Origin: Euprymna scolopes
Taxonomy: Eukaryota
Strand: one strand, 5' to 3'
Length of the DNA stretch: 64,000 bases
NCBI GenBank assembly: GCA_053919585.1
Contig: CM132790.1
The notes under the pieces were generated by a model. That model was not told the DNA's origin, ran no database searches, and was given only the letters and a program-made list of their open reading frames with translations. Below are positions 20,551 through 57,703 of the stretch, in pieces. How positions within the stretch are numbered: position 1 is the first letter of the stretch; every line of letters begins with the position of its first letter. The translations under genes were made by a program, and so were the position numbers.

Positions 20551-20592
20551 ATGAATACCAATACTGTGGATTCCTACTACGGTTGTAGCAAC
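20551..20592 (+). pseudogene. Merlin transposase piece 1 (start)
   Basis: MNTNTVDSYYGCSN joins in frame to 32255 (NYFDTVKAFHKDTSRQFLRKHG) after removing BEL-1 and one TSD copy. Confidence 0.75.
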
Positions 20593-20815
20593 TATGGAAA
20601 AATTAATTTCCTAAAAGTAATAAGACTGCTCAGTCGAGAAGGAAGCAAGATACACTCACCTTTAGAGTTGAGAAAGAATTGCCCCTTCCGCGACGTGACA
20701 GTCAGTTAACAAAATAAGTAAATCAATGTAATCATCAGCATCATCAGCAAAAGTAAACACCACTGAAAATGTAACCATCAGCAGCAAATTTGTAAATACA
20801 ACTGAAAATTGTAAC

Positions 20816-23800
20816 TGTATTTATTTTCAGAAAATTTACAATGTAAAAATCAGAAAAATTTGGCACAAGGCCGAAGATGGGGGAGGGGAAAGGACGGTCT
20901 TCTCTGACTAGTGCTAACTAATCTAACCTAACTAGTTCCTACTTTCACTCTACTTATACCATAATACCACATTCATACATTCTCTCAGCGTATACATCCT
21001 TCATCAATCACCATAAGAACATCATACCATGATAACCTAATTAAAACCCATAAGAAAGGGGGGTTTGGGAAGATAAAAATGTTATATACAAAATACAAAT
21101 GAAATATTGGTATTATTATACAAACACCGTGACAGCGTTAGGGTTAGGGAACATCCAAGAACCAGTCAAGACTTGCTTCTCTCACCCGACACACGCGCAA
21201 CTGACACCCACCTTTCAACAAAGTCTGACGAAGAGAGTCTAACTCTCTCGGCCTTGATACGAACCTTCAAATAATGACGGAAGAGTCGTATAAGGTCGAG
21301 GGGAGCGAAGTCCTCAGATCCATAGACCACTTTCATACGTGTGTTCCAGATAACACCTCTCATCACTGCTAGCAAGGTCAAACACAATTCTTTCTGAGCC
21401 TATCTGTTGTCGGAGTCCAATTGCTACAGACATTAATAGGAACCAAGGTTAATGAGGATGTGTTCAGTATGCGGACCATGAGACCTGTAACAAACTCAAT
21501 CAGCGGCGCCACGATGCGACAATAAACGAAGGCGTGACATAAAGTCTCGTCCTCATCGCCGCACCGTTTACAAATAGGCGAATCCACCAAGCCAGCTGAG
21601 TGGAGTCTCTTACCGACCCAGAGAGCATCCCGAATTACCAGCCAGGTCAGGGAAGCCTCGTTGTTAGTAAGGCATCCTGACCCAGGCGCCCAAGGCCAGA
21701 TTGAGCGGAGCTGCTCCTTCGTCAAAGAGAGCCTCCCACCGATGACATCCGTTACGGATCCCCTCACTAAAACCCGATATAATGCCTTTCGGGACAACAG
21801 CAGAGTGTTAGAGAGGCTTTCCTTCACTCTTAAGAGGGACTTCAGTGCGCGCTGGCACTCGCGATAGAAGGGACATTCACCTCGAGGCAACCTGTGTGCC
21901 TCCCCCTCGGAGTAGTGCACCCCTCTCAAAGCCGGGAAGGCTTTCTTGGTGTCCTCCATCCAGAGGCCACCGTTTTCCCTATCTTGTGTGCACATTCGAT
22001 CTAGGTAGTAGAGCCGTAGCGTGTATAGCCGAATCTCCACATTTGGAGGTCAGGACCAAACCAGACGCCGAGTATCTTGCAAGGCCCATCGCTCCAACTA
22101 AAGGGCCCCTGAAGGGGCATACCCCTCCAGGCACCAATGCGCAAACTCGAAGACTTGTCGCAGTTAATTTTGGCCCCTGTTACCGTTTCATACAGTCTGA
22201 TTTCCACACCGATGACACTAATCTCAGCACTGCTCATTACAAGCACAGTTACATCGTCGGCATAGGTGGAGTACTTCGCCTGGGCATCCACACCGGGCAA
22301 AGTGATTCCGCGTAGGACCGGATTCACCCTTAGCCTGCGCAAAAATGGCTCGATCGCAAGCACATATAGCATGGGTGATAACGGGCACCCTTGACGAATG
22401 GAACGTGACAAACTGAAGGGTCTCGACCTCTTCCCATTTACTTCTACCATCACCGCGGGGTTAGCATAGAGAAGATGAACCCAAGAGCGAAATTGCGGGC
22501 CAAAACCGGCCGCCGATAAAACAGCCCCCAAGTACCGATGGTCAACCCTATCGAAGGCTTTGGACTGATCTAAATTGATCAGCACGGCCTCAGTGTCGAC
22601 TTTTTCTATCATCAGGCGTATCGAGTGAAAGTTATCCTGGATTGTCCTGCCCTTCACGGCACACGTTTGCTCGGGGCTAATAAGACGAGCCAGGACAAGC
22701 TGCAGACGATTTGTGAGAATCTTGGCCAAAATCTTTAACTCAGCGTTAAGCATCGTTAAGGGCCTGAAATTACCTAACCCATCCCCACCATCTTTGCTTT
22801 TACGAACAAGTTTTATCACACCCATGGTAAAGTACTTGAGGATTGAGCCGTTCCTAAACCATGAGTTAAACAAAACCGTCAGTAAAGGGACAAAGATGTG
22901 CGACAACCTCAAATACACTTCGTAGGGAAGACCATCGATCCCCGGTGACTTATTAAGGCTTCAATGACTTCATCCTCCGTTATGCCACCTTCGCACCTAG
23001 CCGCTTCGGTCGTCGAAAGATGAGAAAAGTCAGCCAAATAGGTGTCGAACTGTTCTAATGACAGACTGGGTTCCATGGAAAAAAGCTCCTGGAAATGAGA
23101 TCTAAACGCCTCCAGCACACCCTGGTTTGTGGTCACGGTACGCCCGTCCGGCAATGTGACACGAGCGATGTGCCTATCAACCGCTTGCCTAAGCTCCTCT
23201 GCACGCAGTTCAGCAGCCATGTTTGTTGCTTCCTGGGGTATTCTTTTTAACCTAGCCCTAATCACTAAAGCTTGGTGCTCCTTTTCAGCAAGGGAGGCAA
23301 GCCGAGCCCTAATTATATTAATGCTAGCACTATCCCCCTCCTCCACCGCCCGATCTAGTCTAGACTCTAGTGTCACTTTAGCTGCCCTAGAATCTAGATT
23401 GAGTCTTTTGCTAAAGTCAGCAGCAAAGGACCTAATGGCTTCCTTAACTTTTACCCATCACTTATTCCCAATAATTGCCCCCGTCAATTCCCGCTGTAGG
23501 GTTAGTAATAGCCCGTCACAGAAGCCCTTCACATCGAACAACGACGTGTTGAGCTTCCAGTAACCGGCTAATCTAGGCTTAGGTCTATCTAAGTTTACCC
23601 GTACACGAACAAGTCTGTGATCCGAGTAAACTATATTGTGGAAACTTGGACAATCCAATACTCCTATGTCGACTCGCCTAACTAAGAACCGGTCGATATA
23701 GCTTGAGAGCTGTATCGAATCGGAGCCGCCTCTACCTGTCCAAGTCCACACTAAGTCACGGGGCTTTTCATTTCGGAATTTGTCGATAAGATCAAACTTA

Positions 23801-26248
23801 TCCATAAATTCACAAAATAAAACAGCATCCCGATCTCTGTTAGTTCCCCTAGATGTTAACCTAAATCGATGTAACTCGGGATCCAGGACGGCGTTCCAGT
23901 CTCCCGCTAAAATAACTGTTCTGGAAACATCTATGAACTGCTCGATCCGCCGAAAAAAACCAGCCAGCTCAGAATGGCTATTGGGCGCATAAACCCCAAT
24001 AAGACGTAATGCCCTACCCTTTATGGTAACATCCAAAACACAGTCTTCCCTCCGGATCCAAGTAACACGGGTCACACGACGCATCTAGAGACCTTTTAAC
24101 TAGCCAGGAAACCCCTCTCGAGTGAGAAATCTAGTGCGCTGAGTAAGCCTCAAAGGTCTTAGACAGTGCACTCAAATGGTCACCAGGAATAAGGTTGGTT
24201 TCCTGCACACAACAGATATCCACTCCGAGGTGCTGCAGGTCCAAACTCAAGAGCCATTTGTGAGAGTCGGCCGTTAGCCCTCGGACATTTAAACTAGCAA
24301 GCTTGAGATCCATGGTGGTGCTTTAGGGTTGGGAACCAGGAACGAACATTGCGGTCGTGAGCATGCCGACGGCTCTCGTGAGGGAATAAGTACCCATCGT
24401 AGTATCGATGAGGCCGTCACGAGAGATACCACCGACATGCAAAGGATAGGTTAGTTTTGCTATCCTATATAGGGAGGGGTGCATTTTTACCGGGACCCTC
24501 CCAACACAACATTTTTTAAGGTTTTTTATGTCGCTATCTTTAAACACAACAAGGGGAGTGGGAAGGTTGAAGGCTTTATTTGCCTCTTCGAACATTAGCC
24601 AAAGGTTCTTGGCCTCTTCTTTTTTCCGAACGACGGTTAGGATTCTTTTGGCATTTGGAAAATTAACAGGGATTACTACTAGTTTCCCCCCCACCTCCTT
24701 GAACTCAATTAGTTTTGTGAGGTCAGTTCCTTTGAAGTTCTTGTGATTGTTAATAGCGGCTTGGTTTATTATGTAAATGTCTTTGCCAGGGAGGTAGAGA
24801 GTCTTTTTCTTGTGTTCAGGCGAGGGGGTAATGTCCATAGCAGAATGTGTGTTTTTAGAAGGAGATGCAAGGGGAGTGTTGTGAGTGGTCGCAGAGGTGG
24901 ATGGAATGGGAGAGGAGGGTTTGTGTTTTTTTGAAGGGCTTAAATGTATTAGTTTAGGCTGTTTATAAGGGACCGGAGTTGTAACAGGAGGAGGCATTTT
25001 GAGGGGGGAAGGAGTTTTTGGCTTTGTAGGAGACTGGGTGATAGGGTTGGTTAAAGATTTGGGGCTTGGTTTCGGAGAAGTGGGTTTACATGGGGATTTG
25101 GGTGATGGGTGTTGAGCGTCTAATTTCTTTTTTAGTTTGACAATTTCCAGATATTTCTCTTTTCCAGGGTTGTTTTGTAGCATTGCCTGTTCTTTCATTT
25201 GGTCAAGGCTCAGGCGTCCAGGGGTTTTTCTGCCAGGGTTCTCCCCTGAGGATTTCGTCCGAGTTTGTTTCGTTGGTAGGCGGCTTGGGAACACTTTTTG
25301 ATGAGGATCCCAAGTGTTGTCCGATGGATTTTTTGGTGTTTGGAGGAGGTTTTTTTAAGGGGGCACTCTGACGTGAGGTGGCCAATTTCGCTGCAATTCC
25401 AGCATGTCGGTCTTCTTCCAGCCACTATTATAGGAAGTTTCTCCTCTCCCGCCTCGAGGAAGAAAGGGATCGCATCAAAATTTACCTTATCGAGGAGGAT
25501 GTCATATGACCATATGCCGTGGAACTCGTCCACCTGCACCGAAACCATTTCGCCATATTTTAGAAGGAAGGCGCCGATGTGTTCTCCTTCAATGTGGTGA
25601 GGTACATTAAAAACGGACACCGTAGTCCGACGTTTTCCCATATATTCTGATCTTAATATAAAGTTCTGAGTGATTATCTCTTTTTGTGAGATAGTTAGGC
25701 AATCTTCTGGGGAGTTAAAAAGTACACTCCATGTGTTGTAGCCCTTGCACTTGACGATGCGCAAAGGTCTAAAACCAGCTGTAGCCAAAAGGTTGGTGAA
25801 GATATCTGCACTTGCTCTTATGACTTTTTTTAGTTTTCTGTCGACTATAAATATTGTCAGACACTTTTTTTGGATTTCCTCCAATCTTGGCACATTGACA
25901 ATTAGTCCTTTGTTGGTGACAAGTTCCAGGCATTGTTTTGCCTTTTCAATGAATTCATTGACATTAATATCCACTTTCGGTGGTTTGGTCCAGGTGTTTG
26001 GCGTAGAAGTAGTGCCGTTTTCCGCTTCAGAAATGTCGACGACAATGGGCGTTTGGCTCGCCGAAGCGGCCATAGCCGAACCATTAAAAAAACGGTTAAA
26101 AGAAAGTCCAAAAAAAAACAACTGTTAAAAATAACAGTAAGACAAAGGAAAAAAAAAGCGTCGTGTAGAGAAAAAAAATCCGACGGTAATAAAAATAAAA
26201 GGGTAGAAATTGCTGATAGAATAATGCACGAGACAAGAGTCAAAAGCA
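20816..26248 (-). mobile_element. Tx1/L1-like LINE A, near full length, mutated
   Basis: ORF1 26121-24323 with CWNCSEIGHLTSEC knuckle. ORF2 from 24313 with APE endonuclease (SLNVRGL, QET, GDWN, SDH), RT (QGCPLSP, YADD) and CKRC…H…C finger. No poly(A). Confidence 0.93.
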
Positions 26249-26569
26249 ACTGAAATTGTAACAACAACAAGGAGTTTGATTACCTCCCTTTATAGGTCTG
26301 AAAAGGTCATGTGATCACCATCACATGACCAAGGTAAAGCTTTATAACGCTTCTAGGAAACAACAACTCTTTTGGTTAGTAACAAGATAAGTGCACCTAC
26401 TCCTCTCTCTCCTGAGCAACCAGTAATTTCTAGTTTTTTCCACACATTCCCCAGGAAAGAAAAAAAAAAGAAAATGAAGGGAAACAAAGAATATAAGGGT
26501 AGGCTCTTACTCAAAACAGTAACATGTTAGTATATTTTTTGTTTATTTTCTTTTGTGGTTGGTCCCTAA

Positions 26570-29500
26570 CTATTCGGGGAGGAGGCTAGGCCTGCCTCGC
26601 CGCCGTCGTAGCGGGACACAATCGGGACAGTACCACTTTTGTCTTTCAGGAGGTGGAGACTCAATCCCCACACACCTGAAGTGACACCAGTCATCACATC
26701 TATCACAGCAAATCATGTCCTGGTCACCCTGCGGGGAACCACATATGGGACAATACCAAACAACTTCATTGGAACATGCAGACTGGGGAGGAGTATCACC
26801 GAGATTGTCTGCCGGCTCATCAATTGATGCAGGTACAGTTGGAGCATGATCCTCTTCACTCAAGGATAATTCCAGGGGAAATAGGTTCCTTAATGAGTGG
26901 ATATGTACTGCATTCCCACCCCCCTGTCTGACCCTTGCTGACCTGACTACGCCATCCTCTCTGCAAAACACCTCCAGGATGATTCCAAGGACCCAAAAGG
27001 GCCTAGGCTTCAGAGGACTCTTCACCAACACTACGTCTCCAACCTTTAAACGATTCTGGATAGGCACTCTGGAACGACCCTGGGGTCTCTCTCTGAGACT
27101 CAACAAGTAATTGTACCACAGAGCTTGGAATTTCTCCAGACACTGGTCCCTTACCCGCATGGTTCTGAGAAGCCTCTCTCGACTGGGAGGAAGGTGTGCG
27201 GCAAAATCTGCATCATTGAGACTGAAAAGCAGCCCGGGACTCTCATTAGGCCGCAAAAACATGTTGGGGGTTACTGCCTCCAACTCAGTCTCTGCCGATT
27301 CTCGATAGGTTAGAGGGCGGTTGTTGATGGCTCTTTGAATATCTGATATGATGGTCAATAAGGTGAAATAATTCATCTGACCTCTACCAACCACCTTAAA
27401 AAGACAATTCTTGATTGTCTGGATACTTCTCTCCCAGACACCTTCAACCCAGGGCGAGAAAAGGGGGATGGGACAGAACTTGATTAAACAGGAGCCGAAT
27501 TTCTGTTGGTAATCGTGAGTCAATACCAGCCTCTTAAACAGCCGACCACCACCTAAAAAGGTTTTAGCATTGTCACAATAAATGGCAGAGGGAATGCCAT
27601 ATAGGTTGGTGAACCGCACCAAAGCCTGCAGAAAGGACAACACGCTCATGTCCGGCACCACCTCGACATGTACAGCTCTGACACTGAGACAAGTGAAGAT
27701 GAGCAGGTACATTTTCACCTCCTTATTACCTTCTTTAACCCACAGGTGGCCTGTAAAATCTACCCCCGTGTGTTTGAAGGGAACCTCCAGTTCGATACGG
27801 GAAGCAGGAAGGTTGGCAACATTAGGAGGCATGACTTGTCTGGTATTGTACTTCCGGCACAGGGCGCATGAAGCCAGGACCGTCTTCACTGCCTGTCTGC
27901 CCTTGGGTACCCAGTAACCATGGCGTCTTAATTCTGCCAAAGTGGATGCGACTCCCAAGTGCTGGCATCTGTCATGTGCATCCATGATGATAAGCCTAGT
28001 CACTGGGTGATGTTTTGCCAACAGAATCAGGTGTTTAATTTCCACGTTAAAGTGGAGAGATCGGCTAATTCTACCACCCGACCTGATTAGTCCATCACTA
28101 TCGATGAAGAGGTCAAGGGCCCGCACCAACCCAGGAACAGTCTTGCCTGAAGAATCTAACAAGAATTCTATTTCTTCAGCATATACTTGATGCTGCATAG
28201 TCTTCATGATCAGAATGGCTGCCAGCTTTTCACAGTCAACCTCTACTCGACGCAATCGATTAATAAACTTAACTACCAGGGTGGTCACCCTCAAAAGCTT
28301 TGAAAGGGTAGAGAATCTTTCTAAGGGAAGCACCGTACGAGATTCCTCTCCATGGAGGATAGCAGCATTCCAAGAGGAACGGACTATTTCCTGGCTGCGT
28401 CGACTCAGACATGGCAACTCTTGTGTTACCCATGGTGCAGAACCACTACTCAACCAACTGGGACCATAACACCACAGTTGGAAGCAGGTTCTGAATTTTT
28501 GCATCGTCAACCCCCTTGTGATCAAGTCGGCAGAATTTTCTGCGGTTGGGATGTATCGAAAGGAGGGAACAAAGCCAAGTGCAGATCCCAACTCTCCACT
28601 CATCTGCTGAATGTCCTACAGTCTATTACGGGCAAACAGGTTCTTACTCACAATAGTCCCTGAGACTAGCCAAGAAAGAACAACCTGAGAATCAGTGGCC
28701 ACATGAATCTCAGAAGGAGAGAATCTGCCAAAGCTCCGTAAAATAGTGGGAAAGTATCTAAAAGCCAAGAACACTGCCATAAGCTCCAGTGTAGGAAGAG
28801 TCTTCCTCTTCAAGGGAGCCACCCTAGCCTTTGCAAACACCAGGCACGAATGGCAATCTTGCACCGTGTAAGCGGCGAATCCGTATGCCTCTGGAGAGGC
28901 ATCACAGAAGAGAAAGAGTTTGCCCACTCCATTCTCACTGAATGCCCTTCGGGGAAAGGAAATGGTCCCCAGTTCAGAGATATCAGATGAAAGCTTTTTC
29001 CATAAGGACAAGTATTCTGGTGGTACCAGGACATCCCATGCAAACCCCCCCTTCCAAAGCCTGCTCAACAGAATATGGCCCCGCAATGTAACCGGCAAGC
29101 ACAATGATAAGGGGTCATAGACCTTCGCTGTCTCCCCGAGAATCTGTCTCTTTGTGCAAGCACAAGGGTTGCAATTAACAGGTGTCACATGAAGGGCATC
29201 CGAGAGAGGAGAGTATCGATACCCCAGCACCTTTTCCCAATTGTTACCATGAACACTCAATGTCCCATGTTTTTCCATTTCACCTCGAATACCCACATGA
29301 TCAGAATTACAAGACTGCAATTCAAAACCTCCCTGAAGCAGTCGTTCCCGAGAGAGAGCGTATAATCTACACAGTTCATCTGGATTATCATCTGACATCA
29401 CCAGATTATCCACGTAAAATCTGTTCTCCATCAAAAACCTACAATTGTCCATTGGGAACTGAGCAGCATGGTACCGGAGAACATAATTTAGTATGAAGGG

Positions 29501-31861
29501 ACTGGAAGCAAACCCAAATATAATGGTATTATATCTAAAGCAGCGCAGTCGACCCCCATCCTTCAGAAAAAAACAGAATCGGTTTCTATCTGCTTCCAGT
29601 TTCAGTCGTATCATCAGGAAAGCCTTCCTTATATCCGCTAACACAACATGGTTATTAGCACGGAAGGTGAGCAGTAAATTTAATAGATCACTCGTAAGAT
29701 TCACTCCCTGGTAGGTTGCTTCGTTAAGGGAAGGAAAGTCCCCAGTCTTGAGACTGCAGTTGAACACGGGCCTAATTTTAGTGGTAGAAGTAGGGTCTGA
29801 CTTAAAAACAGGTCTGTGTGGAATCCATATAAACTCCTTAAACCGCTGTGGAGGTACAAAAATCTCTTCTATAATTCCTTCACGTTCCTGATCACGAAAA
29901 ACCTGCAGATAATCATTATAAAGCTGCCTCCGCTCCAATTTTCGTGCTACATGCTCCAATACGCGCAAGGCCACTGCATGGTTCGAAGGTACGCGAGATA
30001 TTTTGTCGTCGTCCCAGGATAACTGGACATAATATTTATTGTCCTTAAACGAGATGGATTGTTGAAAATGAGCAATCTTCTGTTCATCGTAATTGGACAG
30101 TTTCTGCTCATCCAGAGACTCCACACTGAACAATTTCTCCAATCCCCTATGCATGTCACTGTCCATGAAAAAATCGCTCAGGAGATCTTCATACTTGCTT
30201 TGAGATTCCAACACAAAACACAAGTGAGAAGGTTTAACATCAGAAGTTGAGGCTAGGACTGAATCGAAAGCAAGACACTCCGGCTCCCTATGTGTAAAAA
30301 GTTCTGAACAAAGAAACTGCTGCACCTCACCAAAGGGAACCAGTCCTGTTGGTGTGGAGAATGCTTTCCCACGCAAACAAGGAACAAGTTGGAGGGTCCC
30401 CAACTGCTGAATAAAATCCAGGCCCACAATACCATGAATAGGTACAAATCCAGTGCCCCTGTGAAATCTACCAGCTAGGGGACAATTAAGGTGTTGGAAC
30501 TCATCTAAAAGGGAATCCAGTTCCTCAACACGTACTGAAATAGCTATGTCCTCATGCACTAACACCGGAAGAGAATGAGAACAATGTGGTCCAATGCCCA
30601 TCTCCAACACTACCTCTCTAAATTGTCGGTCACAATCTCCAAGGATCGTGGTTAGCTTCAAATCACAATCCAGCCCGATCGACTCCAAAGAACCAAAGGT
30701 CTGCAACACCTTACTGGACAGATAAGTCCGGCCACTGCCCGTGTCCAACAAACAGTTGACAGAAACATAGTTGCCATCTCTACCAAAGGTAACACACACG
30801 ACCGGGGGAAGGCTAGACCATTTTCCACAGGCAGAGTTAACATGAAGAGAAGAATCCCTTCGGCCAGAATAGGACCCTGGTCTGGATGACACATTCCCGG
30901 AGGAGCCCCGACCAGTATTAGGGATAAACCCAGGGACCTCGTCCCCCTTGATAAGGAGACATTTGACCGCCTCCCTGGTATCTTGCAAAATGGAGGATAA
31001 AGTAGGGATTCTTTTACTGTAAATCTGGATTAACTCTCCTCTGACCTCTCTGGGGCATTTGGAGAAGAGAATCTTCGCCATAAGGCGCGCCCCAGAAGAA
31101 CAGTTATTAGAGAATGAACAATCAAAGGAGCCTTCCAACTCCGCAAGAAGTGAGGCTGCTCTGGACATAAAACCAGTTAAACTGGTGTACGATTTGTCTC
31201 GTTTACAGGAGAAGTCTAAAATGTCCTGGAAGATGTTATCTATAATTTCATCTTCATCGAGATACTCGCTTTTCAGGACCGAGAGAGCCAACTCATAATT
31301 CCTGTTGCATATACTAAAATTGTTAATCAACAGGAGAGGTTGACCAGACAGAGAGCATTTTAAGAAATTCAGCCTTTCGGCATCATTGGCCATACCAGCT
31401 ACGCAGTTTTCAAAACGCGACAAAAAATTCCTAAAGCTCATAGGATTGGATTGCATAGCCAACCCATCAAAGGTAGGACCCGTAATTTGTATTTGAGGTG
31501 GCTTCACGGTAAAAGATGACACTCCTCTCTCACGTTCAGAGGTACCTTGAGCAAGGCTTAGTGACTCAGGGGCAGCAGGGAGGAACTTCAACTCAAGATG
31601 TTCCAGTTCCTTTCGGAATCACAAGGCGGTTGCCAGAGCATCCTTCTCAATTCTCACCCAGTCCTCCTCCTCAGAAGATTGAAGTTGGATTTTGCTAACG
31701 CATATGTCTACCTCCACCAAATACTCATAAACGGATTTCTGCAATGCAGAGAATGATTTAACGGAGATTTCATTCTCCTGATGAGCCGTCTCCAGAATTG
31801 TTCGGATTTTGATCCATAGGATAGAAATTCTTCTCCGTAGATCTGCTTTGCTACTATCCAT
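26570..31861 (-). pseudogene. BEL-1 Gag-Pol with C-terminal PHD finger (one frameshift near 31600, one in-frame stop at 28616)
   Basis: LLDTGS protease, FYVDN RT, FCDAS RNase H, HLG…CALC and GVDFTG/CDNA/WER integrase, terminal C4HC3 finger. Confidence 0.95.
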
Positions 31862-31888
31862 GTTAGTATTAGGGTTTCTTTCGCAATA

Positions 31889-32250
31889 TATGGAAAAATT
31901 AATTTCCTAAAAGTAATAAGACTGCTCAGTCGAGAAGGAAGCAAGATACACTCACCTTTAGAGTTGTGAAAGAATTGCCCCTTCCGCGACGTGACAGTCA
32001 GTTAACAAAATAAGTAAATCAATGTAATCATCAGCATCATCAGCAAAAGTAAACACCACTGAAATTGTAACAACAAGGAGTTTGATTACCTCCCTTTATA
32101 GGTCTGAAAAGGTCATGTGATCACCATCACATGACTAAGGTAAAGCTTTATAACGCTTCTAGGAAACAACAACTCTTTTGGTTAGTAACAAGGTAAGTGC
32201 ACCTACTCCCCTCTCTCCTGAGCAACCAGTAATTTCTAGTTTTTTCCACA
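31889..32250 (-). repeat. BEL-1 5' LTR (362 bp)
   Basis: Near-identical to the two halves of the left LTR. Ends TATGGAAAAA…TTTTTCCACA. Confidence 0.95.
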
Positions 32251-32254
32251 CAAC

Positions 32255-47995: not shown

Positions 47996-48104
47996 GTCGG
48001 CACGTGCACTGGCCCAGATGAGAAACGGGACGCTAAAACTCTGATTCCGTTGGTGCACTGGTGCACAAGTTTATCCTTCCGGGCTCAATAATTTTCAGTG
48101 ATTG
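47996..48104 (+). pseudogene. Merlin transposase piece 3
   Basis: KRDAKTLIPLVH/KFILPGSIIFSD (second catalytic D), with an 8-bp duplication causing a frameshift. Confidence 0.85.
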
Positions 48105-51100
48105 TGTCGATATTTCCTACCGACGAGTGGGGGGGGGGGAGGAGAAAAGACGTTTAGCTTGCAACGAAAAATTACCTCGTTGCTTACAAGCAAACGTATT
48201 CTTGTAAATATAACGCGCTGTTAACACTTGTCGTACCGCTCTGATAGATCTCTAACAACGACAAGAACAAACTGTTATTTAGCCTTTCGTCCCCGGCCTT
48301 GGCATTATCTACTGCCAAGGCCTCATTTGGGGTACGAAAAAGCTTAGGCACTAAGGCCAGTAAGGGGAAGTGGGGGAAAAAAGGGGTCTTTTCTAGTCCT
48401 TAGCTAGACTTGCGTCAGATAGCAAGTACTTTATTGTAAAACCTACACTAGAGTTTCTATCACGTACTGTTCGGCCTAACATTCTTACCAGAACCTACTT
48501 AAAATAACAGCTCCCCAGCTTACGGGATGGCAGGCGACATTCACGCTGTGAGGAAAAAGCATAAAAAAACCTATAACATTATTTACAAACTAAAGGTGTT
48601 TTTCTATTTTTATTTTTTTAATAATGGGGGCGAGATGATGGGGAGGGGGGCAAACTAGAATACACCCAAAAAGAAAGAAAAAGAAAACAAATGAACAAAA
48701 TGCCTATGGGGGCGGGTTAGTAAGGGGACCCTCCCTACCTAACGGCTGGTCTGTCGTATGAAACACCCACTGTCTTCCGGTCCTCTTCCCCCGGGGGAAA
48801 AAGGTGAAAGCAAGCAGGTCGTTTCCTAGAGGGGAGTGGAGGAACTAGGGACTTGTATGAAAAATAAATTAGGGTCGGGGATAACAGAGATGGATGGCGT
48901 CTTCCAAGATAAAATACGTAATGGGTAAAAACAGGCCTAGGACAAAATAAAACAAGTGGACTATTGGGCATCTCCTAGTGCCAATCTATCAAAAAATAAA
49001 AAGCTATGGGAACAGGATTGACACGCATACTACCCTAGCCTAGGCCCTATAAAAAGCACAAGCTATCCACTCTTGGTGATTACGTACCTATCTAGCCTTA
49101 AACCTACCCAACATTATAAGGTGAACCTTATATTGCTTGTCTTGATGGGGCTGGGTTCCAAGAAAAAAGAAACCTCAGCACCCTAGGATCAATACCACTA
49201 GGGTGGAAACACGAACTGAAATCTAGCGCCTCGTCAGATGCACAAACTAGTGTTGTGCACCCATCTCCTATCAAAGTCGATGCAGTGCAATCTTTTCCAA
49301 TCACATCTGATTTTCGTTTTAAGTTGATGCTTAAAACGAACTACCAGATCATGATCAGAAACAGATTGCTCCTCATAGACAATGTCCAGACGTGAAACCC
49401 ACGTCACTAACCTAGCCACCGCTAGGATCACCGCCCGTTTCTCCCTGTCAAACGGCAGATCCACATTGTTGACTACATACGCTAAATCAAGTGGCACCGA
49501 CCGCTCGGGGTCGATGCGAGCCATTACCCCTTTGACATACTCCCAGAGACTCCGCACCCCGCTGCAAAGAAAGAATGCGTGTTCTCTTGTTTCCTCCTCT
49601 TCTTCATCATTGCAGTGTGGGCACGGGGGATAGTAGTAACCCCTATCCCGATCATCCCTGGCTAGTTTGCCAAAGAGTGGCAGCGCGTCCTGGAGTAGCC
49701 TCCACGTGATAGAGAATTCTGCATTGTTAATATGGCTACTGGCAGGCGCCCAACTCCACAGCGAGAGAACTTCCCCCCTCGACAGATGTAGCCGCTCCAC
49801 CAGCGGGTCTTTTGCAGTCCCCACCACTAAATCCTCATATAGCCTCCACCTAGGCCGTGCAAGGTTACTGGACCCCGGCAATGCCCTAAGGGTGGGACGG
49901 CATTCGGTCAGGAAACACCTTTCCCCCACCGGTCTTCTGCGACCTTCAGTGGCAGGGTCGGATATGAGCCGTGGGAAAGCTTGCTCCACGACTGGTACCC
50001 AGGGCGTTTGCTCCATCAGTGTCCGACTCAGGAACGCCAATCTTTCTGCGTGCTTGTGACTTTGCAGATCAGGCATCCCTAAGCCTCCCTCGCTAAGCTT
50101 CTTTGGTTACCTGCCTCGGGATCGAGTCCTGGGCAAACCAGTGGTTAAACACGCCCGTCAGAAGGGGCACAAACATGGGCGACAGCCTCAAGAACAGTTC
50201 GTAAGGCAAACCATCGAGCCCCGGAGATTTGTTGCGGCCAACCTGCTTCAACGCAGTAATGACCTCATGCTCCGTAACCATCCCCTCGCAGCTAGCCGCT
50301 CGGGCCGCAGTAAGGCGGGGCGAGCCAGCTAAATAGCTGCCAAACTCCTGGCCGCGGAGTCTGGGTAGTTTGGTGAAGCACTCCTCCAAATGTTGCCGAA
50401 ACCCATTGCAGATCTCCCGTGCCGACACGAGAGAGCGCCCTCCCAGGTTTTTCACCTCCCGAATGTACCCATCCGAGCCGCGTCTTAGGGCGGCCCTACG
50501 CTCAACAGCGTCAACATTCACGGCTTCGTTGGAGACTCTTTCTAACCTAGCCCTAACTACGTGACTTTCATAACGCTCGCTAGCCAAGCGCTAAAGGTCC
50601 CCTTTAACTAGAGCTAGTTCTAGGGAGTCCCCCCCTGCCACCGCCCGGGTCAATCTATCCTCTAAGTGCCTTTTAGTCCCAGCCCTAGTTAACGCGAGGC
50701 ATTGGCTGTATTGGACACAAAAGCGCCTAATGGTAGCCTTAAGATTAACCCACCATCTACTCCCAGTAACTGCCCCCACTAACTCCCTCTGAATTAGTGA
50801 TATCAGCTGCTCCCGAAAGTCGACCGACTCCAATAAGGAGACGTTCATCTTCCAGTAGCCAGCCAACCTAGGCCTATTACCTAGTTTCAAACGGGCCAAC
50901 ACGAGTTTGTGGTCCGAATGACCTAACCAGTGGAACGTGGGACAAGATAGGAAATCTATATCGCCCCTTCTAATTAACATCCTGTCCAAGTATGTACTTG
51001 GACCGGCGGCCGAGCTAGATTGCCACATCCATATCTCCCTCCCTGGGTGATCCAGACGGAACCTATCGACCAGATCGCACGAGGCCATCAGGTCAGACAG

Positions 51101-54100
51101 GCTGCTTTCACCGACCCTCTAACCCCCCCGACCTTATGTATGCTGGGGTCCAGGATGACATTCCAGTCCCCCATTAAAACTACCTGCTCCGGACCCGAAG
51201 AGAGAAACACCTCCACTCGCGGATGTTAGGCGCATAAACTGCCACGATCCGAAACGCGCCGCTTTTAACGGCAACATCGACCACGACCAACCTCCCATGA
51301 GCGTCCGTGTGGACAAACGTTACCGTCGCAGACAGAGTGCGACTCACTAGTACAGAAACCCCCCGGCCATGGAGGCTGCCATATGCTGAGTAAACATCAA
51401 AATCGTTCACCAGCACATCGCAGTCCCCGGCCCCAACAAAGTGGGTCTCTTGTAAGGTGGCTACATCTACCTCAAGGGCCACGAGATCCTTCAGCATGCG
51501 AGCAGCCTTGCTTCGGGATCTCATGCCCCTCGTATTCAAACTAGCTAGATTTAAGCTCGTTGCCATGCTTCCACTACCTAGTAGTATTCGCCTACTAGGG
51601 GTCTAAAGTCCTCGGGAGAAAGGACGTCGAAGGTCTGGCCCAGACTGCCCTTGAGCAGGTCGGGCGTAAGCTGCCCGTTCCTGGCCAGACCCCCCACGTC
51701 CAAGGGGAACGACAGTTTAATAGCCCTATTGAAGGAGGGGTGAACATAAATGGGGACCCGTCCCTCGCACTGTTTAGCTATTTGTCCAAGTGATGGGTGC
51801 TCCTCGTCGACCAGCCTGAAACCCGGAAAAGTTGTTCTTCCAGCCTCCAGCATCCTCCATAAAGCCTTTGCTCTCCCTCCCCTATTTGGCCGAACGAACG
51901 TAATCAAGTTCGGGGCGTCAGCGAAATTGTGGGGGTCGATGACTTCTTTGCCGTCCACAGTTCTAGTTTCTCAAGCTGTCGGAGATTCTTCTTTTGAGTC
52001 CCATTAAGGTCCCCGACAGCGAGTTCTGCGTCACAAAGACGCTCCCCAGGCCGGAAAGGATATTTCCTGTTTTTTTCTGTCCTGGAGGGCACCTTTACTT
52101 CCTCTGGTCTTCCTTCCGCCGACGTTGCTTCTTGGTTGTCTGGAGTGTCCTTCTCTAGCTCCGGAGTGTTGAATAGGGGAGGGGTAGGCTGAGCATCTTC
52201 CTGGGGGAGTGATGCTGGAGGCTCAGCTTTCTGGTCATTATCCATGGACTCAGGGGGAGTCTCGTTGGTGTTGTCTTCTTGAGGAAGCTCTGTGGGGTGT
52301 CTCTGGGAGGCTCCTTCCTCTCCCTCTTTTCTTTCTTTTTATTCTTGGGTGTGGCTTCCTCCCCTTCCGACTCGGAGGAGCTTGTTTGGAGCTTCCTCTT
52401 TGCAGTTGCCGCAACTGCCCTCGATGTTGTAGGGACCACCTCCATCTTTTTGCCCTTCTTTCCGGCGATTGTACTCCATTCATTCTCCCCCTTCGTCTTC
52501 TCCGGCTTCTGCCCTTCTTCCTTCTGCTGGTCAGGTTTTTTTTGTGGCTGCTTCTTTTCTTAGAGGACAGAAGCGGGCCATATGTCCAGGCTTCAGGCAT
52601 TACCAGCACAGCGGTCTTCATCCTTCAACAATGATTGCCATATTCCAGCCCTCACACGTCAACTGAGCGGGGATCAGGTAGAAGTTCTTGCGTTCGACTC
52701 GCATGTATATCTTGTAAGTCCCCGTGATGATGTTCCGGGGGCCTTTGACTGGGTGCACCCCCTCCACCTCTCCAAACTGCGACAGCGTCGCTCCCAACAG
52801 GTCCTCCCCGATAAAGCACGGGACCCCCAGCACTGTCACCATTGCACGTCTTCTGGAGAGATACTCCGGTCGCAAACGAATGTCCTTCCACGTGAGGTCT
52901 CCCTTTGCCCAACTCATCGTCACTTCCTTTGACGGCAAAATGAGATCCCACGTGGAATGGTATCTCTTTACTAGATACTGGGCCGGGATCTTTAATTCGC
53001 CCAGTATTTCAATCATTTTCTCAAGGGAAACCCCAGTGAGCCCCTTCCCACCGGCATCAAAGGTGATGAAGAACAGCGTTCTCTGTTTAATATCCTCCAT
53101 ATATCGGGTAGGGTTTTGATCGGATTTCCCTCCATGTACTCCCGGTACTTATTCTCCAACAGATCTTTGTAGTATTCTGGAGTCTTGATATTGGTGTTGC
53201 TGTTGTCCTTCCACCAAGCTCCTGACTTCTGATATAGCCACCTCATTCTCTGCGGCATAATTTACTGGCGCACTAATCCGTTCCATTTGAGCCTTAGAAA
53301 GGCAGCCCAATTCACGATGGCACCAGGAGAATTCTTCTTGCTTTATCCACTTAGGTCCCTCATACCAAAGAGAAAGTTTTTCCTTAAATTTTCTTATGGT
53401 CAAACCTCTGGTGATGTAATCCGCTGGGTTTTCAATTGTCGATGAATACTTAAAGTTGACTTTTATGTTGAAATCACATTTGATCTTCTCTCTCATTTGA
53501 GCTATGTCCTGTAATCTATGTTGTAAAAACACGTTTTTCGTTTGGACGAAATCGGACAGAATCCAGGGCAGAACCACCTGAGCATCCGTGATTACATAGA
53601 CATCCTTAATAGTAATGTCCTTTAGTGACTCCTTTATAAAGGGGAGGCACTTCACGGCTAAAAATACCGCTAGAAGTTCTAACATCAGGAGGGATTTTCC
53701 CTGCTGAGGAGACATTTTTGCCTTTGCAAGGACCAAGGATGAGTTCCCATCCTGTACAGCGTACACCGCAAACCCATATGCGGCTTTAGATGCATCACAA
53801 AAGAAAAATAATTTGGTATCCTTTCCTTCATCTAAAGCTCTCCTTGGAAATGATACATTGTTTAACGCGGACAGATCCTTTGCCAGCGTTCTCCAAACTG
53901 AACTCATACTCTGAGGAACCACATCATCCCAATTTAATTTTTGTTTCCATATTTCTCTCATCAAGAGACGACCTCGCACTGTCACAGGTAGATAAAGAGA
54001 CAAAGGATCAAATACCTTAGAGGTCTCAGACAATATTTTCCTCTTAGTAGACGCCTCCACGTCGCATGATGGTGGGCAAACACTTATTGAATCTTGGACA

Positions 54101-57100
54101 GGGTCATATTGATATCCCAACACTTTTTCCCAACCAGAGTCGAATCCTGACAATGTTCCATCTGCCTCCATTTTCTTTTGGAGTGTTACACAGTTGGAAT
54201 TGCAAGATTGCAAATCAAAATTTCCTTTCTGTAAACATTCTCTCCTAGTAGTATACAAGGCAGATAGGTTTTCTGCATTATTTGCAGTTTTCACCAAGTT
54301 ATCCATATAAAAATTGGATTTCAATGTTTCTGAACAGTCATCCAAAGGGAACTTATCCGCATGAAACTTTAATACATAATTTAAAATAAAGGGGCTTGCA
54401 TTGAAGCCAAATATAATCGTTTTGTATCGGTAGCAATGCAAGTTTTTACCTTTCTTTAGAAAAAAGCAAAATCTATTACGATCCCTTTCAGATGCCAGCC
54501 GAATCATCAGAAATGCTTTCCTAATGTCAGCTAGCAATACGTATCGGTTTGTTCTGAATCGGATCATCAATTTTATCATGTCTGTCATCAGATTTACTCC
54601 AGGATATGCTGCTTCGTTCAATGATACTGAGTCCTTATTCTTATATGAACAATTAAACACTGGTTTCACTTTGGTAGTAGTCTGGTCAGTTAGTTTTAAC
54701 ACTGGCCTATGAGGTATCCATATATAATCTTTAAATTGTTCAGGTGGCACAATTATCTCTTCGATAATGCCCTCATCTTCTTGTTGTTGAAAAACTTGCA
54801 GATAGTGATTATACAAGTTTTTCTTCTCTAGATCTTTGGTAATCCTTTCTAGAACTCGAATAGCAGCATTGTGATTCGAAGGTACTGATTTTATTTTATC
54901 TTCATACCACTGAAGTTGCACATGATAAAGACCATCTTTAAATGTGATGGAATCTCGGAATTGCTTAACTTTCTCTTCATCCAAGGTGAAGAATTTCTCG
55001 TCAGTGGGTAATCCAATGGATTCAAGGTTGAACATGTTCTCCAACCCTCGCTGGACATTACTTTCTTCGAACCAATTTTTTAAAGGGTCTGGGTAGGATT
55101 CCTTTGGGTGAACCACATAATTGATTCTGGCAGGTGGAAGTTCAGGAGTTCTAGCCAACACTTCTGCATAATTAATCTGTGTTCTTTTTTGGTTTTTAAT
55201 CTGGTGTTTATAGAGAAAAGAACACCTGTTTCCAAAGGGGATTAATCCTTTTTGTGTCTCGAATGCCACTCCATACATGCAAGGGATTACCTTTAAAGGT
55301 TCCAGGTACTGGATTGCATCGAGTCCTAGTAACCCATCTATTATAATCAAATCCCTCTTGGCATCAAACTTTGCAGCCAGCCTGCGATTTTTTAAATTCC
55401 CAAGAATCTGAGTAAGTCCTTCAAGGCGATAGGATAAATTCAACTGGGTTGCTAGAATTGGGAGAGTATGAGTTCTCTCAATAACCAAATTTAATCCCAC
55501 AGAGATTTCCTTAAAATTTTTAGGACTAGTGCCTAAAAAGGTTTTTACCTCCATTCTTTTATCCTTGGCTAAGGAGAGGCGATTCAGCTTTTTTAAAATT
55601 AAAGTGTCAAAATAAGTCCGTTGACTGCCAGTGTCCAACAGGCAGTTCACCTTTACCTTTTTTTCGCCTCATATCACTATTATGCCAATTATGGGTGACA
55701 GGAAAGCATCATTATAGCCCTTTGTATGCAGGCAAGTATCAACCTGCATACTTCTTGTAATGGTTGAGTACATAGCAGTTATGTGTCCCTTCGAGTTGCA
55801 ATGATGACAACAAATTTTTCTTGATGTTTTTAATGGACACATATTCTCCAAGTGAGACCTCTTTAGGCACCGAAAACAGAGACGCAACTCTCTACACCTT
55901 GTTATCCTTGCTTCATGAGTAGAATAGCTGTCACAATCTTCGGACAAATGTTTATTTGTTTTGCAAAATTCACATTTTGCCTCGGATATTAACTTAGTAT
56001 TAAAGGTTTTGAGAGACGAGGTTTCAATTGTCTGCTCTGGCTTAAACTTAGGTTGGAGTCGAGTTTTGGCCATTAGTATCTTGGTCGGCTTTCTGGCAAC
56101 CAGCATCCGTTTTACTATACTTAGGGTTTCCTTCAACAGTGTAGACAATGTTGGGTATGAAATTCGTAACAGTTCTTCCCTATTTCAGGAGGGAATTTCG
56201 TAAATAACACTTGTGATATTATTATCGCTCTAGCTGACTTATCGTCATATAAGTCACAATTATAAGAGGCCCTTAGTTCCCACATATCTGCCTGGGTCTT
56301 GATCATAAAATTTTTTAATCCTTCCAGGTTTTTGGGATTGTCCAACTGAAAATCGAATATTTCCTTAATTATTTCCCCTCTTATCTCCTCCTCATCCAAC
56401 TACTGGTCCTTCAGTAGCTTCAGGGCCATCAAGTAACTTTCGTCAGAGGGTGAAAGATGATTTATAAGTTGGAGTGCTCTGCTTTCCAAGGAACATCTCA
56501 AAAAATAGAGTTTTTCAGTGTTAGACGTAATGGACTTGGCACAATTTTCAAATTTTGTCAAAAAGTCCTTGAAGATCCTCTTGTTGGTCTCAAAGTCCTT
56601 CTCATCAAAGCGTGTTCCCTTCAATTTTATCTTGAATGGCTCCACTGAAAATGAAGAATGGGCTTTTGGTTCGAAGGGTGGTAATCTTTCAGTGTTTGGA
56701 GTAACCGGGTTCTCCTGACTTGGAGTAGAGTCAATATCTCCTTCCATTGAAGTGGCTGTTGGGTTCTCACTCTGGTCAGCTTTGTGCAGAAAACTTAAAT
56801 GTTGCCTGGCTTCATATTTGAAGCAGAAGGAAGCTAGACTTAAGCTTGCCAACGCTTCTGCTTGTCCCCTTACAGCAAAGTGTTCCTCCATGCCAAAGGA
56901 GACTCCTTCCAGCTCTTCTAACCAGTCCTCTATTTCACGTTTAAATAGAGAAACCACTTCTTCAGAACTCTTCTCCTCCTTTTCTAACCCTTCCAGGGTA
57001 GTCTGTATTTTTCGTTGAAGAAGTTTCTGTTTCAGCTTCAGTTCCTCCATCGAGACTGAATCCTCCATGTTGTTAATTCCGACTTATCTCGAGAATAATT

Positions 57101-57526
57101 AAATTCTAAAGTTGGTTGAAATTCGCAGCCGGATTTTTTTCGTTACAATGTGTCGATATTTCCTACCGACGAGTGGTGGGGGAGGGGGAAGAAAAGACGT
57201 TTAGCTTGCAACGAAAAATTACCTCGTTGCTTACAAGCAAACGTATTCTTGTAAATATAACGCGCTGTTAACAGTTGTCGTACTGGTCTGATAGATCTCT
57301 AACAACGACAAGAACAAACTACAACAACAACAAGCCTACAAAGGTGACTCTTTTTATAGTCTCAATCTCTTGTTCAGCGAGATTGAAACGAGACTGAAAC
57401 GTCTATTTAAGCTATAAGGAATAGACATCCTATTTTCTTCATATTTTCTTCAGGCCGTTCACAGCCATGAGTGTCTTCCCTTCCCACCGAGCCACCCTCG
57501 GTAAGTCAATCAATTTAATTATCACA
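48105..57526 (-). mobile_element. BEL/Pao LTR retrotransposon 3 (integrase and U3 of the 3' LTR lost, LINE B in their place)
   Basis: 5' LTR 57151-~57526; 3' LTR remnant 48105-48273; Gag from 57068; 833-aa PR-RT-RH ORF 55650-53149. No TSD recoverable. Confidence 0.9.
48274..53215 (-). mobile_element. Tx1/L1-like LINE B (RT core deleted, 5' end fused to BEL-3 pol)
   Basis: ORF1 pieces 53100-51578. ORF2 from 51566 (SLNTRG, QETH, SDH, KSPGLDGLP), then a jump to GGLGMPDL and a CPHC…H…C finger. ~950-nt 3' UTR without poly(A). Confidence 0.9.
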
Positions 57527-57703
57527 CTTTAATTTAATTTTCCACACTACACTATAAACCACTCAGAAAATTTTGTGGACCCTCAGGATCCCAGAATCCA
57601 CACACAAAATGTAGAACGAATGTGGCTAGACGTAAAACAGTGGATTAAGCGGCCTGGTATTCGAGCAGAATTCCTGCAGCAATATCTAGCCAGGTATTTG
57701 TAA
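57527..57703 (+). pseudogene. Merlin transposase piece 4
   Basis: HYTINHSENFVDPQDPRIHTQNVERMWLDVK…QYLARYL (catalytic E). Confidence 0.9.

What the first reader, a model, noticed from the sequence alone, without database searches (positions are those of the whole stretch)
20760..26300. Two different Tx1-like LINEs occupy the equivalent site in BEL LTRs: candidate promoter-targeting hyperparasite
Seen: LINE A interrupts the BEL-1 3' LTR and LINE B joins the BEL-3 3' LTR (48273/48274). Both are co-oriented with the host element. Both junctions map ~30-40 nt downstream of the LTR TATAAA (intact LTRs: TATA 32095-100 vs junction ~32060-70; TATA 57353-58 vs junction 57320), next to a (GTT)n tract and an Inr-like AGT. 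LINE A is flanked by an imperfect ~14-bp duplication ACTGAAA(A/T)TGTAAC, and its short 5' UTR begins right after the LTR promoter. Known: the Tx1 clade contains many sequence-specific inserters, including Xenopus Tx1L in a DNA transposon. Inference: these LINEs target the LTR transcription start and borrow its promoter. Only two events are visible.
Basis: partly seen in the sequence, partly recalled or inferred. Interest (0 to 1): 0.78.

Follow-up and report, generated by a model that had tools for sequence, protein, structure and literature searches.

The report
LINE that lands on LTR start sites
A family of jumping genes (LINEs) in this mollusc genome is found almost only about 30 bases downstream of the TATA box of another kind of jumping gene (BEL retrotransposon LTRs), in at least seven unrelated LTR families. 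It therefore seems to aim at the transcription start point itself and to use the host element's promoter.

Summary

**LINE A (20776-26248, minus strand).** It is a clean insertion with a 14-bp target-site duplication (TSD) in the 3' LTR of BEL-1. The intact 5' LTR shows the empty site. The duplication begins 30 nt after the first T of TATAAA.

**Genome-wide, the pattern is far stronger than two events.**
- Of 56 copies carrying the conserved LINE 5' end, 43 lie 38-65 nt downstream of a TATA-like box.
- These 43 fall into seven flank groups with unrelated site sequences. Five of the groups were examined and look like BEL LTRs.
- Nine more copies are head-to-tail tandem copies separated only by a duplication.
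- Duplications are 13-16 bp and begin at +30 to +34 from the TATA box, where transcription is expected to start.
- The predicted empty site of one group occurs 56 times in the genome.
- One group carries 13-16 nt copied from another group's start site. This indicates transcription from the LTR promoter.

**LINE B (48274-53231).** It is full length. Its 3' end meets the BEL-3 LTR at +40, but its 5' end abuts BEL-3 pol, so there is no duplication. Only one other copy shares the junction.

How the start site is recognised is unknown. I found no published precedent. This scan had not noted it on other DNA.

The parts
20593..20775 (-). BEL-1 3' LTR, distal part (start-site region to the U5 end), downstream of LINE A
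   Evidence: 98.9% identical to 31889-32071 of the intact 5' LTR
20762..20775 (-). Target-site duplication, copy at the LINE A 3' end
   Evidence: Same 14 nt as 26249-26262 and 32058-32071, one mismatch
20776..26248 (-). LINE A: 5473 bp, a degraded full-length copy. ORF1 ATG at about 26073, CCHC knuckle in 25210-26121, APE in 23458-24084, RT in 22001-22918, zf-RVT in 21378-22040
   Evidence: Pfam hits. Several frameshifts. About 340 nt of 3' UTR are missing relative to other copies
20776..20815 (-). One 39/40-nt tail unit after the common LINE end (AAAATAAATAC at 20817-20827). The unit is homologous to the LTR sequence just downstream of the nick
   Evidence: The same unit forms about 8 copies in L002 and more than 80 copies in L003, between the LINE end and the LTR
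26249..26262 (-). Target-site duplication, copy at the LINE A 5' end
26249..26446 (-). BEL-1 3' LTR, proximal part (U3 with TATAAA at 26289-26294), directly upstream of LINE A
   Evidence: 97% identical to 32058-32252; sequence read
26447..31888 (-). BEL-1 internal region (gag, Peptidase_A17, integrase with PHD finger)
   Evidence: Pfam hits
31889..32252 (-). BEL-1 intact 5' LTR, which serves as the empty site. TATAAA at 32095-32100, target 14-mer at 32058-32071
48103..48273 (-). Remnant of the BEL-3 3' LTR (from +40 after TATA to the U5 end), abutting the LINE B 3' end
   Evidence: 95.9% identical to 57149-57320
48274..53231 (-). LINE B: 4958 bp, full length by family 5' end, 28-65% amino-acid identity to LINE A
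   Evidence: Family matches start at query position 100/101, which is 53231. tblastx against LINE A. zf-RVT hit
53232..57148 (-). BEL-3 internal region, cut off at the RNase H/integrase boundary by LINE B
   Evidence: pol homology to BEL-1/BEL-2 runs down to about 53254-53260, equivalent to BEL-1 position 28361
57149..57546 (-). BEL-3 intact 5' LTR. TATAAAAAG starts at 57358; the LINE B junction corresponds to 57320/57321

Best explanation
LINE A belongs to an L1/Tx1-type LINE family, about 6.1 kb when complete. Its members insert by target-primed reverse transcription into BEL/Pao LTRs, in sense orientation. The first (antisense-strand) nick falls at the transcription start point, about 30-34 nt after the TATA box. 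The second nick falls 13-16 bp further on.

Shown:
- The position is constant in at least six LTR families whose sequences at the site are unrelated.
- TSDs and empty sites exist.
- Repeated hits on the same site give head-to-tail arrays.

Inferred:
- After insertion, the LINE sits between the LTR's TATA box and the rest of R, and is transcribed from the LTR promoter.
- Its RNA starts with the duplicated 13-16 nt of R. Because the AATAAA signal lies 5 nt before the LINE's end, the RNA probably also ends a few nucleotides into the same R sequence.
- These terminal repeats would guide exact re-insertion into other LTRs of the same family by base pairing, as in R1/R2-type elements.
- Jumps to new LTR families land at the same distance from the TATA box without homology. 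The particle must therefore read a promoter feature (the TATA complex or the initiating polymerase) rather than a DNA word. That recognition step is unknown.
For: Window: a clean LTR interruption with a 14-bp TSD and an intact sister LTR.

Flanks of the 30 best full-length copies:
- All 30 either have a TATA-like box (one degenerate, TATTAA) about 38-65 nt upstream of the LINE head (29 copies) or follow another LINE head to tail (L041).
- They fall into six unrelated sequence groups.
- Each group's last 12-15 nt recur after the LINE tail in the 3' flanks.

Genome counts:
- The core 5' motif has 56 hits, control 0.
- 31 of them have TATAA 38-68 nt upstream, control 0.
- 10 more form a seventh group with xATAAAAG. 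One has AATAAAAG and one has TATTAA. Nine are tandem tail-TSD-head junctions at 6.1-kb spacing.

Nick position: +30, +33, +32, +34, +32 and +32; TSDs of 13-16 bp.

Flank identity:
- The shared upstream blocks end 156-260 nt from the LINE and begin TGT(G/A)G. For groups a and c-e this matches an LTR start.
- They share the CTTACC motif of the window's BEL LTRs.
- Two groups have a polypurine tract just upstream.
- Group b has BEL gag 446 nt downstream.

Empty sites: the predicted group-e empty site has 56 hits, control 0, including pairs 5.9 and 6.9 kb apart.

Promoter use:
- All four group-d copies carry group b's 13-nt start segment (plus 3 nt) between their own TSD and the LINE head.
- Off-target copies L030 and L029 keep 5-10 nt of group e or group a R sequence after the LINE end.

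A short derivative sharing the LINE's 3' end sits at the same BEL-1 site.

Other organism: related LINEs show the same tandems, and two have TSDs starting +32 and +34 from TATA-like boxes.
Against: - No transcription start has been mapped. 'Start site' rests on TATA spacing and on one transduction.
- Five of 30 3' ends lie elsewhere, and 4 of 56 5' ends are unexplained.
- The one group-f copy has a shorter TATA-to-LINE distance (head at +38).
- Many group-b copies on contig C46 are segmental duplicates, with flanks 99-100% identical over 760-1500 nt, so there are fewer independent events than copies.
- Groups f and g were not shown to be LTRs.
- R starts are partly alike in pairs of groups (ATTTCAGT in a and b; CAGTGTG in c, d and f). 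Some family jumps could therefore have been helped by homology.
- Nearly all copies examined are frameshifted.
- LINE B does not show the full pattern.
- Only the best-scoring 30-40 copies per search could be inspected.
Confidence: 0.75

Rival explanations
1. Homing plus lineage sorting. The LINE has no intrinsic start-site recognition. Rare random insertions that happened to land just behind an LTR start became the only expressed master copies. They then spread within that LTR family by base pairing of the LTR-derived ends of their RNA.
For: RNA ends very probably carry LTR sequence: the 5' transduction in group d, R remnants after the tail in L029 and L030, and a 39-nt tail unit homologous to the target. 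Some groups share partial start-sequence similarity.
Against: Expression alone only requires landing somewhere downstream of the start. Yet six groups all have the nick within a 5-nt window (+30 to +34) and TSDs of 13-16 bp. The b-to-d jump has only TGT in common with its new site.
Confidence: 0.14
2. Capture during BEL reverse transcription. BEL minus-strand strong-stop DNA ends exactly at the RNA 5' end, which is the start site. It switches template to a LINE RNA, so the LINE becomes built into an LTR before the BEL integrates.
For: This would explain a LINE tail joined to the first base of R in any BEL family regardless of sequence. It would also explain LINE B's structure (3' end at R, 5' end in pol). 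The window's LINE A is in a 3' LTR.
Against: - The duplicated segment has a near-constant length (13-16 bp) in different families, as expected for staggered nicks.
- Many LINE-bearing LTRs have unrelated sequence on both sides.
- There are long head-to-tail LINE arrays.
- Group b copies lie in 5' LTRs.
- BEL-1's other LTR is empty.
Confidence: 0.07
3. The pattern comes from copying composites, not from targeting. A few LTR+LINE chimeras were multiplied by segmental duplication or by retrotransposition of the carrier BEL.
For: Eight or more C46 copies share flanks at 99-100% identity over 760-1500 nt.
Against: - There are seven different flank groups.
- Within groups, flanks diverge exactly at the LTR edges in loci on different contigs.
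- The group-e and group-g loci lie on many different contigs.
- Empty LTR sites are common.
Confidence: 0.03
4. The LINEs are microsatellite or sequence-word inserters that target (AAC)n/(GTT)n or an AGT word, which BEL-1 and BEL-3 LTRs happen to contain.
For: GTT repeats adjoin the site in BEL-1 and BEL-3.
Against: Groups b-e and g have no GTT tract at the site. No base is conserved around either nick.
Confidence: 0.01

Closest known systems
Tx1-clade target-specific LINEs: Tx1L in the Tx1D DNA transposon, Tx1-Mar in Mariner-N4_AMi, and Tx1-8_Crp / Tx1-4_AMi in specific LTR retrotransposons (Kojima 2015, PMC4494074)
   Same: An APE-type LINE nested in another transposon. That paper proposes transcription from the flanking target for the co-mobilised SINEU elements. 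There is no poly(A) tail.
   Different: Those families recognise one target sequence. This family sits at one position relative to the TATA box in at least six or seven LTR families with unrelated site sequences. Clade membership was not tested here.
R2 / R1 rDNA-specific LINEs
   Same: No need for an own promoter because they are co-transcribed with the target. Target-derived RNA ends help exact junctions (as cited in PMC4494074).
   Different: R2 uses a restriction-like endonuclease and a single rDNA site transcribed by Pol I. Here the endonuclease is APE-type and the targets are TATA-type LTR promoters.
SLACS / CRE / CZAR elements in trypanosomatid spliced-leader genes (from my own knowledge, not checked here)
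   Same: Inserted a few nucleotides downstream of a start site and driven by the host gene's promoter.
   Different: They are sequence-specific for one conserved gene, have a restriction-like endonuclease, and do not live in other transposons.
Dictyostelium TRE5-A (PMC3159450) and yeast Ty3
   Same: Position-specific, sequence-independent integration measured from a transcription landmark.
   Different: Those read Pol III factors at tRNA genes. This would be a Pol II-type TATA promoter, and the targets are other retrotransposons.

Membership tests
APE-type non-LTR retrotransposon, L1/Tx1 group | APE endonuclease N-terminal to an RT in ORF2 | tested here: met
   Exo_endo_phos in 23458-24084, RVT_1 in 22001-22918, zf-RVT in 21378-22040
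APE-type non-LTR retrotransposon, L1/Tx1 group | RT nearest to L1-type RTs | tested here: met
   Best solved relative is human L1 ORF2p at 4e-30, against R2 at 5e-15
APE-type non-LTR retrotransposon, L1/Tx1 group | ORF1 with a CCHC knuckle | tested here: met
   zf-CCHC in the window ORF and in the intact 503-aa ORF1 of L036; the latter scores 20.2 bits, just under Pfam's 20.8 cut-off
APE-type non-LTR retrotransposon, L1/Tx1 group | Insertion flanked by a variable-length TSD | tested here: met
   14 bp in the window; 13-16 bp elsewhere
Tx1 clade proper | RT phylogeny groups it with reference Tx1 elements | not tested
Sequence-specific (target-word) LINE | One conserved target sequence at the nick | tested here: not met
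   Seven flank groups with no conserved base at either nick
Target-specific LINE by Kojima's criterion (more than 20% of flanks are one type of sequence) | Most flanks belong to one class of repeat | tested here: met
   52 of 56 5' ends are behind TATA boxes or in tandem. Groups a-e have BEL-LTR hallmarks
Position-specific, transcription-complex-guided retrotransposon (TRE5-A / Ty3 type) | Constant distance from a promoter landmark regardless of sequence | tested here: met
   Nick at +30 to +34 from the TATA box in six groups
Position-specific, transcription-complex-guided retrotransposon (TRE5-A / Ty3 type) | Physical contact with a transcription factor | not testable with these tools
   Needs biochemistry
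Promoter-less LINE driven by its target (R2, SLACS type) | Progeny carry target sequence starting at the target's start site | tested here: met
   All four group-d copies carry group b's 13-16 nt between their TSD and the LINE head. C9:78016510 is similar
Promoter-less LINE driven by its target (R2, SLACS type) | No internal promoter in the 175-nt 5' UTR | not testable with these tools
   Needs reporter or transcript data

The most novel reading that the evidence does not exclude
The LINE particle reads the Pol II pre-initiation complex or the TATA-bound factor and nicks the template strand at the start point, whatever the sequence. That would make it the first Pol II counterpart of the Pol III-guided TRE5-A/Ty3 targeting, and a LINE that lives as an obligate parasite of other retrotransposons' promoters.
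Probability: 0.35. Interest if true: 0.9.

Novelty: new variant of a known kind. Interest (0 to 1): 0.8.

Why it matters
LINEs face a standing problem: a copy made from RNA loses any promoter that lies upstream of its start. Known answers are internal promoters, or nesting in one conserved transcribed gene.

This family appears to use a third answer. It lands exactly at the start point of TATA-type LTR promoters of many different BEL families. Every new copy then gains a promoter, and the insertion disables or taxes another parasite rather than a host gene.

If the recognition is of the promoter complex rather than of a sequence, it would be a natural system for delivering DNA to Pol II start sites. 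It would also be a clear case of a transposon parasitising other transposons.

Practically, it gives sequence-based markers for BEL LTR start sites in a genome with little functional data.

Tried and rejected
- **LINE B family TATA test.** A 14-mer of its 5' end with TATAA upstream gave 1 hit, the same as the control. The 14-mer alone has 18 hits, and none lies in the family copies. The word is not conserved and the test is uninformative.
- **LINE B in held loci.** No LINE B copies are present.
- **Genome letters.** The flanks of LINE B copies, of groups f and g, and of the four unexplained 5' ends could not be read, and I did not try to get them another way.
- **ORF1 word search.** It gave one relative only.
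- **Pfam at E up to 1.** It found no extra DNA-binding domain in the ORF1 or inter-domain pieces.
- **Literature.** Four full-text searches found no report of a LINE aimed at Pol II or LTR start sites. The nearest is Kojima 2015.
- **Link to BEL self-priming.** I rejected a link between the TSD and the BEL self-priming segment noted earlier in this scan, because that segment lies about 90 nt further downstream in the LTR.
Full report
**1. What is in the window**

A self-comparison shows a BEL/Pao element on the minus strand.
- Its 5' LTR is intact at 31889-32252.
- Its 3' LTR is split into 20593-20775 and 26249-26446. The two pieces overlap by 14 nt on the intact LTR (32058-32071).
- The 5473-bp insert (20776-26248) is co-oriented with the BEL element.
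- The insert encodes a CCHC ORF1, an APE endonuclease, an RT and a zf-RVT domain, broken by several frameshifts.
- It is flanked by the 14-mer as a TSD with one mismatch.
- On the element's strand, the duplication starts 30 nt after the first T of TATAAAG (32100 downward).

**2. LINE B**

- Its 3' end (48274) abuts the last 171 nt of a BEL-3 LTR (48103-48273, matching 57149-57320). This is 39 nt after the first T of TATAAAAAG.
- Matches of the LINE B family begin at query position 100/101 of a probe across its 5' region, which places the family's 5' end at 53231. The copy is therefore full length at 4958 bp.
- Immediately upstream is BEL-3 pol, with homology to BEL-1 and BEL-2 down to about 53254-53260.
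- The integrase region and the U3 of the 3' LTR, about 2 kb in all, are missing. There is no TSD, and no LTR promoter in front of this copy.
- A probe across the 3' junction found one other copy with the same junction (C6:145700599-145700831, 95%) among the 40 scored matches. The rest were LTRs alone.
- LINE A and LINE B share 28-65% amino-acid identity.

**3. The LINE A family genome-wide**

The window lies in a 5.9-Gb assembly.

I fetched the 30 best matches to the LINE A 5' end. All of them have the same head (TGCTTTTGACTCTTGT, or a version a few nucleotides shorter). Twenty-nine have a TATA-like box about 38-65 nt upstream, one of them degenerate (TATTAA), and the thirtieth (L041) follows another LINE head to tail.

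The flanks fall into six groups with unrelated sequences, a to f. In the list below, '|' marks the start of the TSD.

| Group | TATA box to TSD | Notes |
|---|---|---|
| a | TATAAAG..CTTGTT\|GTTACAATTTCAGT | BEL-1 LTR |
| b | TATAAGA..TTTGGC\|TGTGATTTCAGTT | |
| c | TATAAAAG..GGGCG\|TCAGTGTGGAAAG | |
| d | TATAAAAG..CGGCAG\|TGTCCTGCAAATTGT | |
| e | TATAAAAA..GAGTTA\|CTTCATTCCTTTAT | |
| f | AATAAAAG.. | one copy |

The 30 best 3' ends all share the tail ..AAAATAAATAC, with no poly(A). In 24 of the 30, the tail is followed by the same 12-15 nt that precede the head in one of the groups. These are therefore TSDs.

**4. Counts over the whole genome**

Pattern searches give the tallies below.

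| Class of 5' end | Copies |
|---|---|
| Conserved 19-nt core of the LINE head, total | 56 (control 0) |
| TATAA 38-68 nt upstream | 31 (control 0) |
| Seventh group g (xATAAAAGAGG..AAGG\|CATTCTGAAGTTAGAT), on 8 contigs | 10 |
| Group f (AATAAAAG) | 1 |
| Group-d copy with TATTAA | 1 |
| Tandem junctions reading tail\|TSD\|head | 9 |
| Unexplained | 4 |

- The tandem class includes arrays at 6.1-kb spacing on C20 and C41.
- That accounts for 52 of 56 copies.
- The first base after the inferred antisense-strand nick is at +30, +33, +32, +34, +32 and +32 from the first base of the TATA box in groups a, b, c, d, e and g.
- TSDs are 13-16 bp.
- Several TSDs start at, or next to, a CA dinucleotide typical of initiators.

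**5. The flanks are BEL LTRs, and the LINEs are real insertions**

- Among independent loci, the shared upstream block ends 156-260 nt from the LINE and the shared downstream block ends 80-180 nt after it.
- In groups c, d and e the upstream blocks begin TGT(G/A)G (group b begins T(A/G)TTGA). Twenty to 50 nt further in, all carry the CTTACC motif seen in the window's BEL LTRs.
- Groups c and d have a polypurine tract just before the block.
- In two group-b loci, BEL gag follows 446 nt downstream, so the LINE is in a 5' LTR.
- I joined the group-e upstream flank, one TSD copy and the downstream flank into a 42-nt predicted empty site. It has 56 genome hits at up to 3 mismatches (15 exact, control 0). 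These include same-strand pairs 5.9 and 6.9 kb apart, as expected for the two LTRs of one element.
- Many group-b copies on C46 are segmental duplicates. Even so, at least six group-b contexts are independent, and groups e and g each lie on many contigs.

**6. Evidence that the LTR promoter drives the LINE**

- All four group-d copies have 16 nt (CTTTGTGATTTCAGGT) between their own 15-nt TSD and the LINE head. This segment is not in the group-d LTR, whose sequence continues GTGTGTGG. It matches group b's TSD plus the 3 nt before it.
- The simplest reading is as follows. The parent sat in a group-b LTR. Its RNA began about 31-33 nt after that LTR's TATA box. This RNA was then inserted into a group-d LTR, again at the start point.
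- A similar extra segment is seen at C9:78016510.
- At the 3' end, AATAAA lies 5 nt before the LINE's end, so cleavage should fall within the following LTR sequence.
- In line with that, off-target copies keep 5-10 nt of group-a or group-e R sequence after AAATAC (L029, L030).
- Group-a copies carry a 39-nt unit between the tail and the LTR: one unit in the window, about 8 in L002 and more than 80 in L003. The unit is homologous to the LTR sequence just downstream of the nick.
- A short element of about 390 nt shares the LINE's last 300 nt. It occupies the same BEL-1 LTR site in L002.

**7. Mechanism**

- Shown: the insertion position, the TSDs, the empty sites, the tandem arrays and the transduction.
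- Inferred: the RNA has the same R-derived 13-16 nt at both ends. This would guide precise re-insertion into LTRs of the same family by base pairing, as described for R1/R2-type elements (cited in PMC4494074).
- Jumps between families cannot use homology. The b-to-d jump shares only TGT with its new site. Yet these jumps land in the same 5-nt window, so I favour recognition of a promoter feature.
- Rival explanations are selection plus homing, capture by BEL strong-stop DNA, and amplified composites. The section Rival explanations weighs each. The near-constant TSD length, LTRs with unrelated sequence on both sides, and the tandem arrays argue for chromosomal target-primed insertion.

**8. Other organisms**

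- A word search with ORF1 found one relative. It lies in a head-to-tail LINE pair in ENA sample ERZ25069865.
- A search with the endonuclease region found 49 relatives, mostly from ERZ21867824. I read seven of these loci.
- The LINEs in those loci are 72-75% identical to LINE A in ORF2 at the nucleotide level. They have the same AATAAA-bearing tail without poly(A) and occur in tandem with TSD-sized spacers.
- Two copies have clear TSDs of 18 and 14 nt. These start +32 and +34 from an AATAAAA box and a TATATAG box respectively.
- One of these two flanks looks like coding sequence, not an LTR. This is suggestive only.

**9. Comparison with what is known**

- Tx1-type LINEs nested in specific transposons, including two families in LTR retrotransposons, are on record. 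So is the idea that a target's transcription can replace an own promoter (PMC4494074).
- TRE5-A shows position-specific targeting through Pol III factors (PMC3159450).
- Four full-text searches found no LINE aimed at Pol II-type or LTR start sites.
- The RT is closest to L1 ORF2p among solved structures. Placement in the Tx1 clade was not tested.

**10. Verdict**

I rate this a new variant of a known kind: a target-specific, promoter-borrowing LINE with a new logic of target choice. The interest is high. The recognition mechanism and the status of LINE B remain open.

Noticed in passing
L003 (G000:C8:170875041-170878276) and L002: There is a 39-nt tandem repeat (GTTACAATTTCAGTTGTATTTACAAATTTGCTGCTGATG). 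It forms more than 80 units in L003 and about 8 in L002, between the LINE 3' end and the BEL-1 LTR. It looks like an expandable LINE tail derived from the target sequence.
   Followed up: partly
L002:1457-1840 and L029:about 1460-1799: A short element of about 390 nt has a G-run head (TTAACAACGGGGGGGGGG..) and shares the LINE's last 300 nt. It is probably a non-autonomous partner. One copy lies at the BEL-1 LTR start site.
   Followed up: partly
G000 contig C46, 25-55 Mb (L044-L049, L051, L053, L056): At least nine LTR+LINE composites have flanks 96-100% identical over 700-1500 nt. This indicates recent segmental duplication of a block that contains the composite.
   Followed up: no
window 53232-57546 and 48103-48273: BEL-3 lacks its integrase region and the U3 of its 3' LTR exactly where LINE B sits. 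Either the LINE insertion came with a 2-kb target deletion, or a later rearrangement removed the segment.
   Followed up: partly
window 20588-20592 and 32253-32257: BEL-1 itself is flanked by a 4-5-bp duplication (GTTG, then T or C). This confirms a complete integration event around the LINE-bearing element.
   Followed up: no
L007:about 1790-1850: Two LINE copies lie tail to tail around a single group-e TSD in inverted orientation.
   Followed up: no
window 20828-21140 compared with other copies: The window's LINE A lacks about 340 nt of 3' UTR that most other copies have (between positions 5104 and 5141 of the element).
   Followed up: no
L061, L065, L066, L068 (ENA ERZ25069865, ERZ21867824): Related LINEs in other assemblies also form head-to-tail tandems. 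In L066, two copies of a 15-nt TSD (TCCCTGCTACTTCCG) lie between a LINE tail and the next head.
   Followed up: partly
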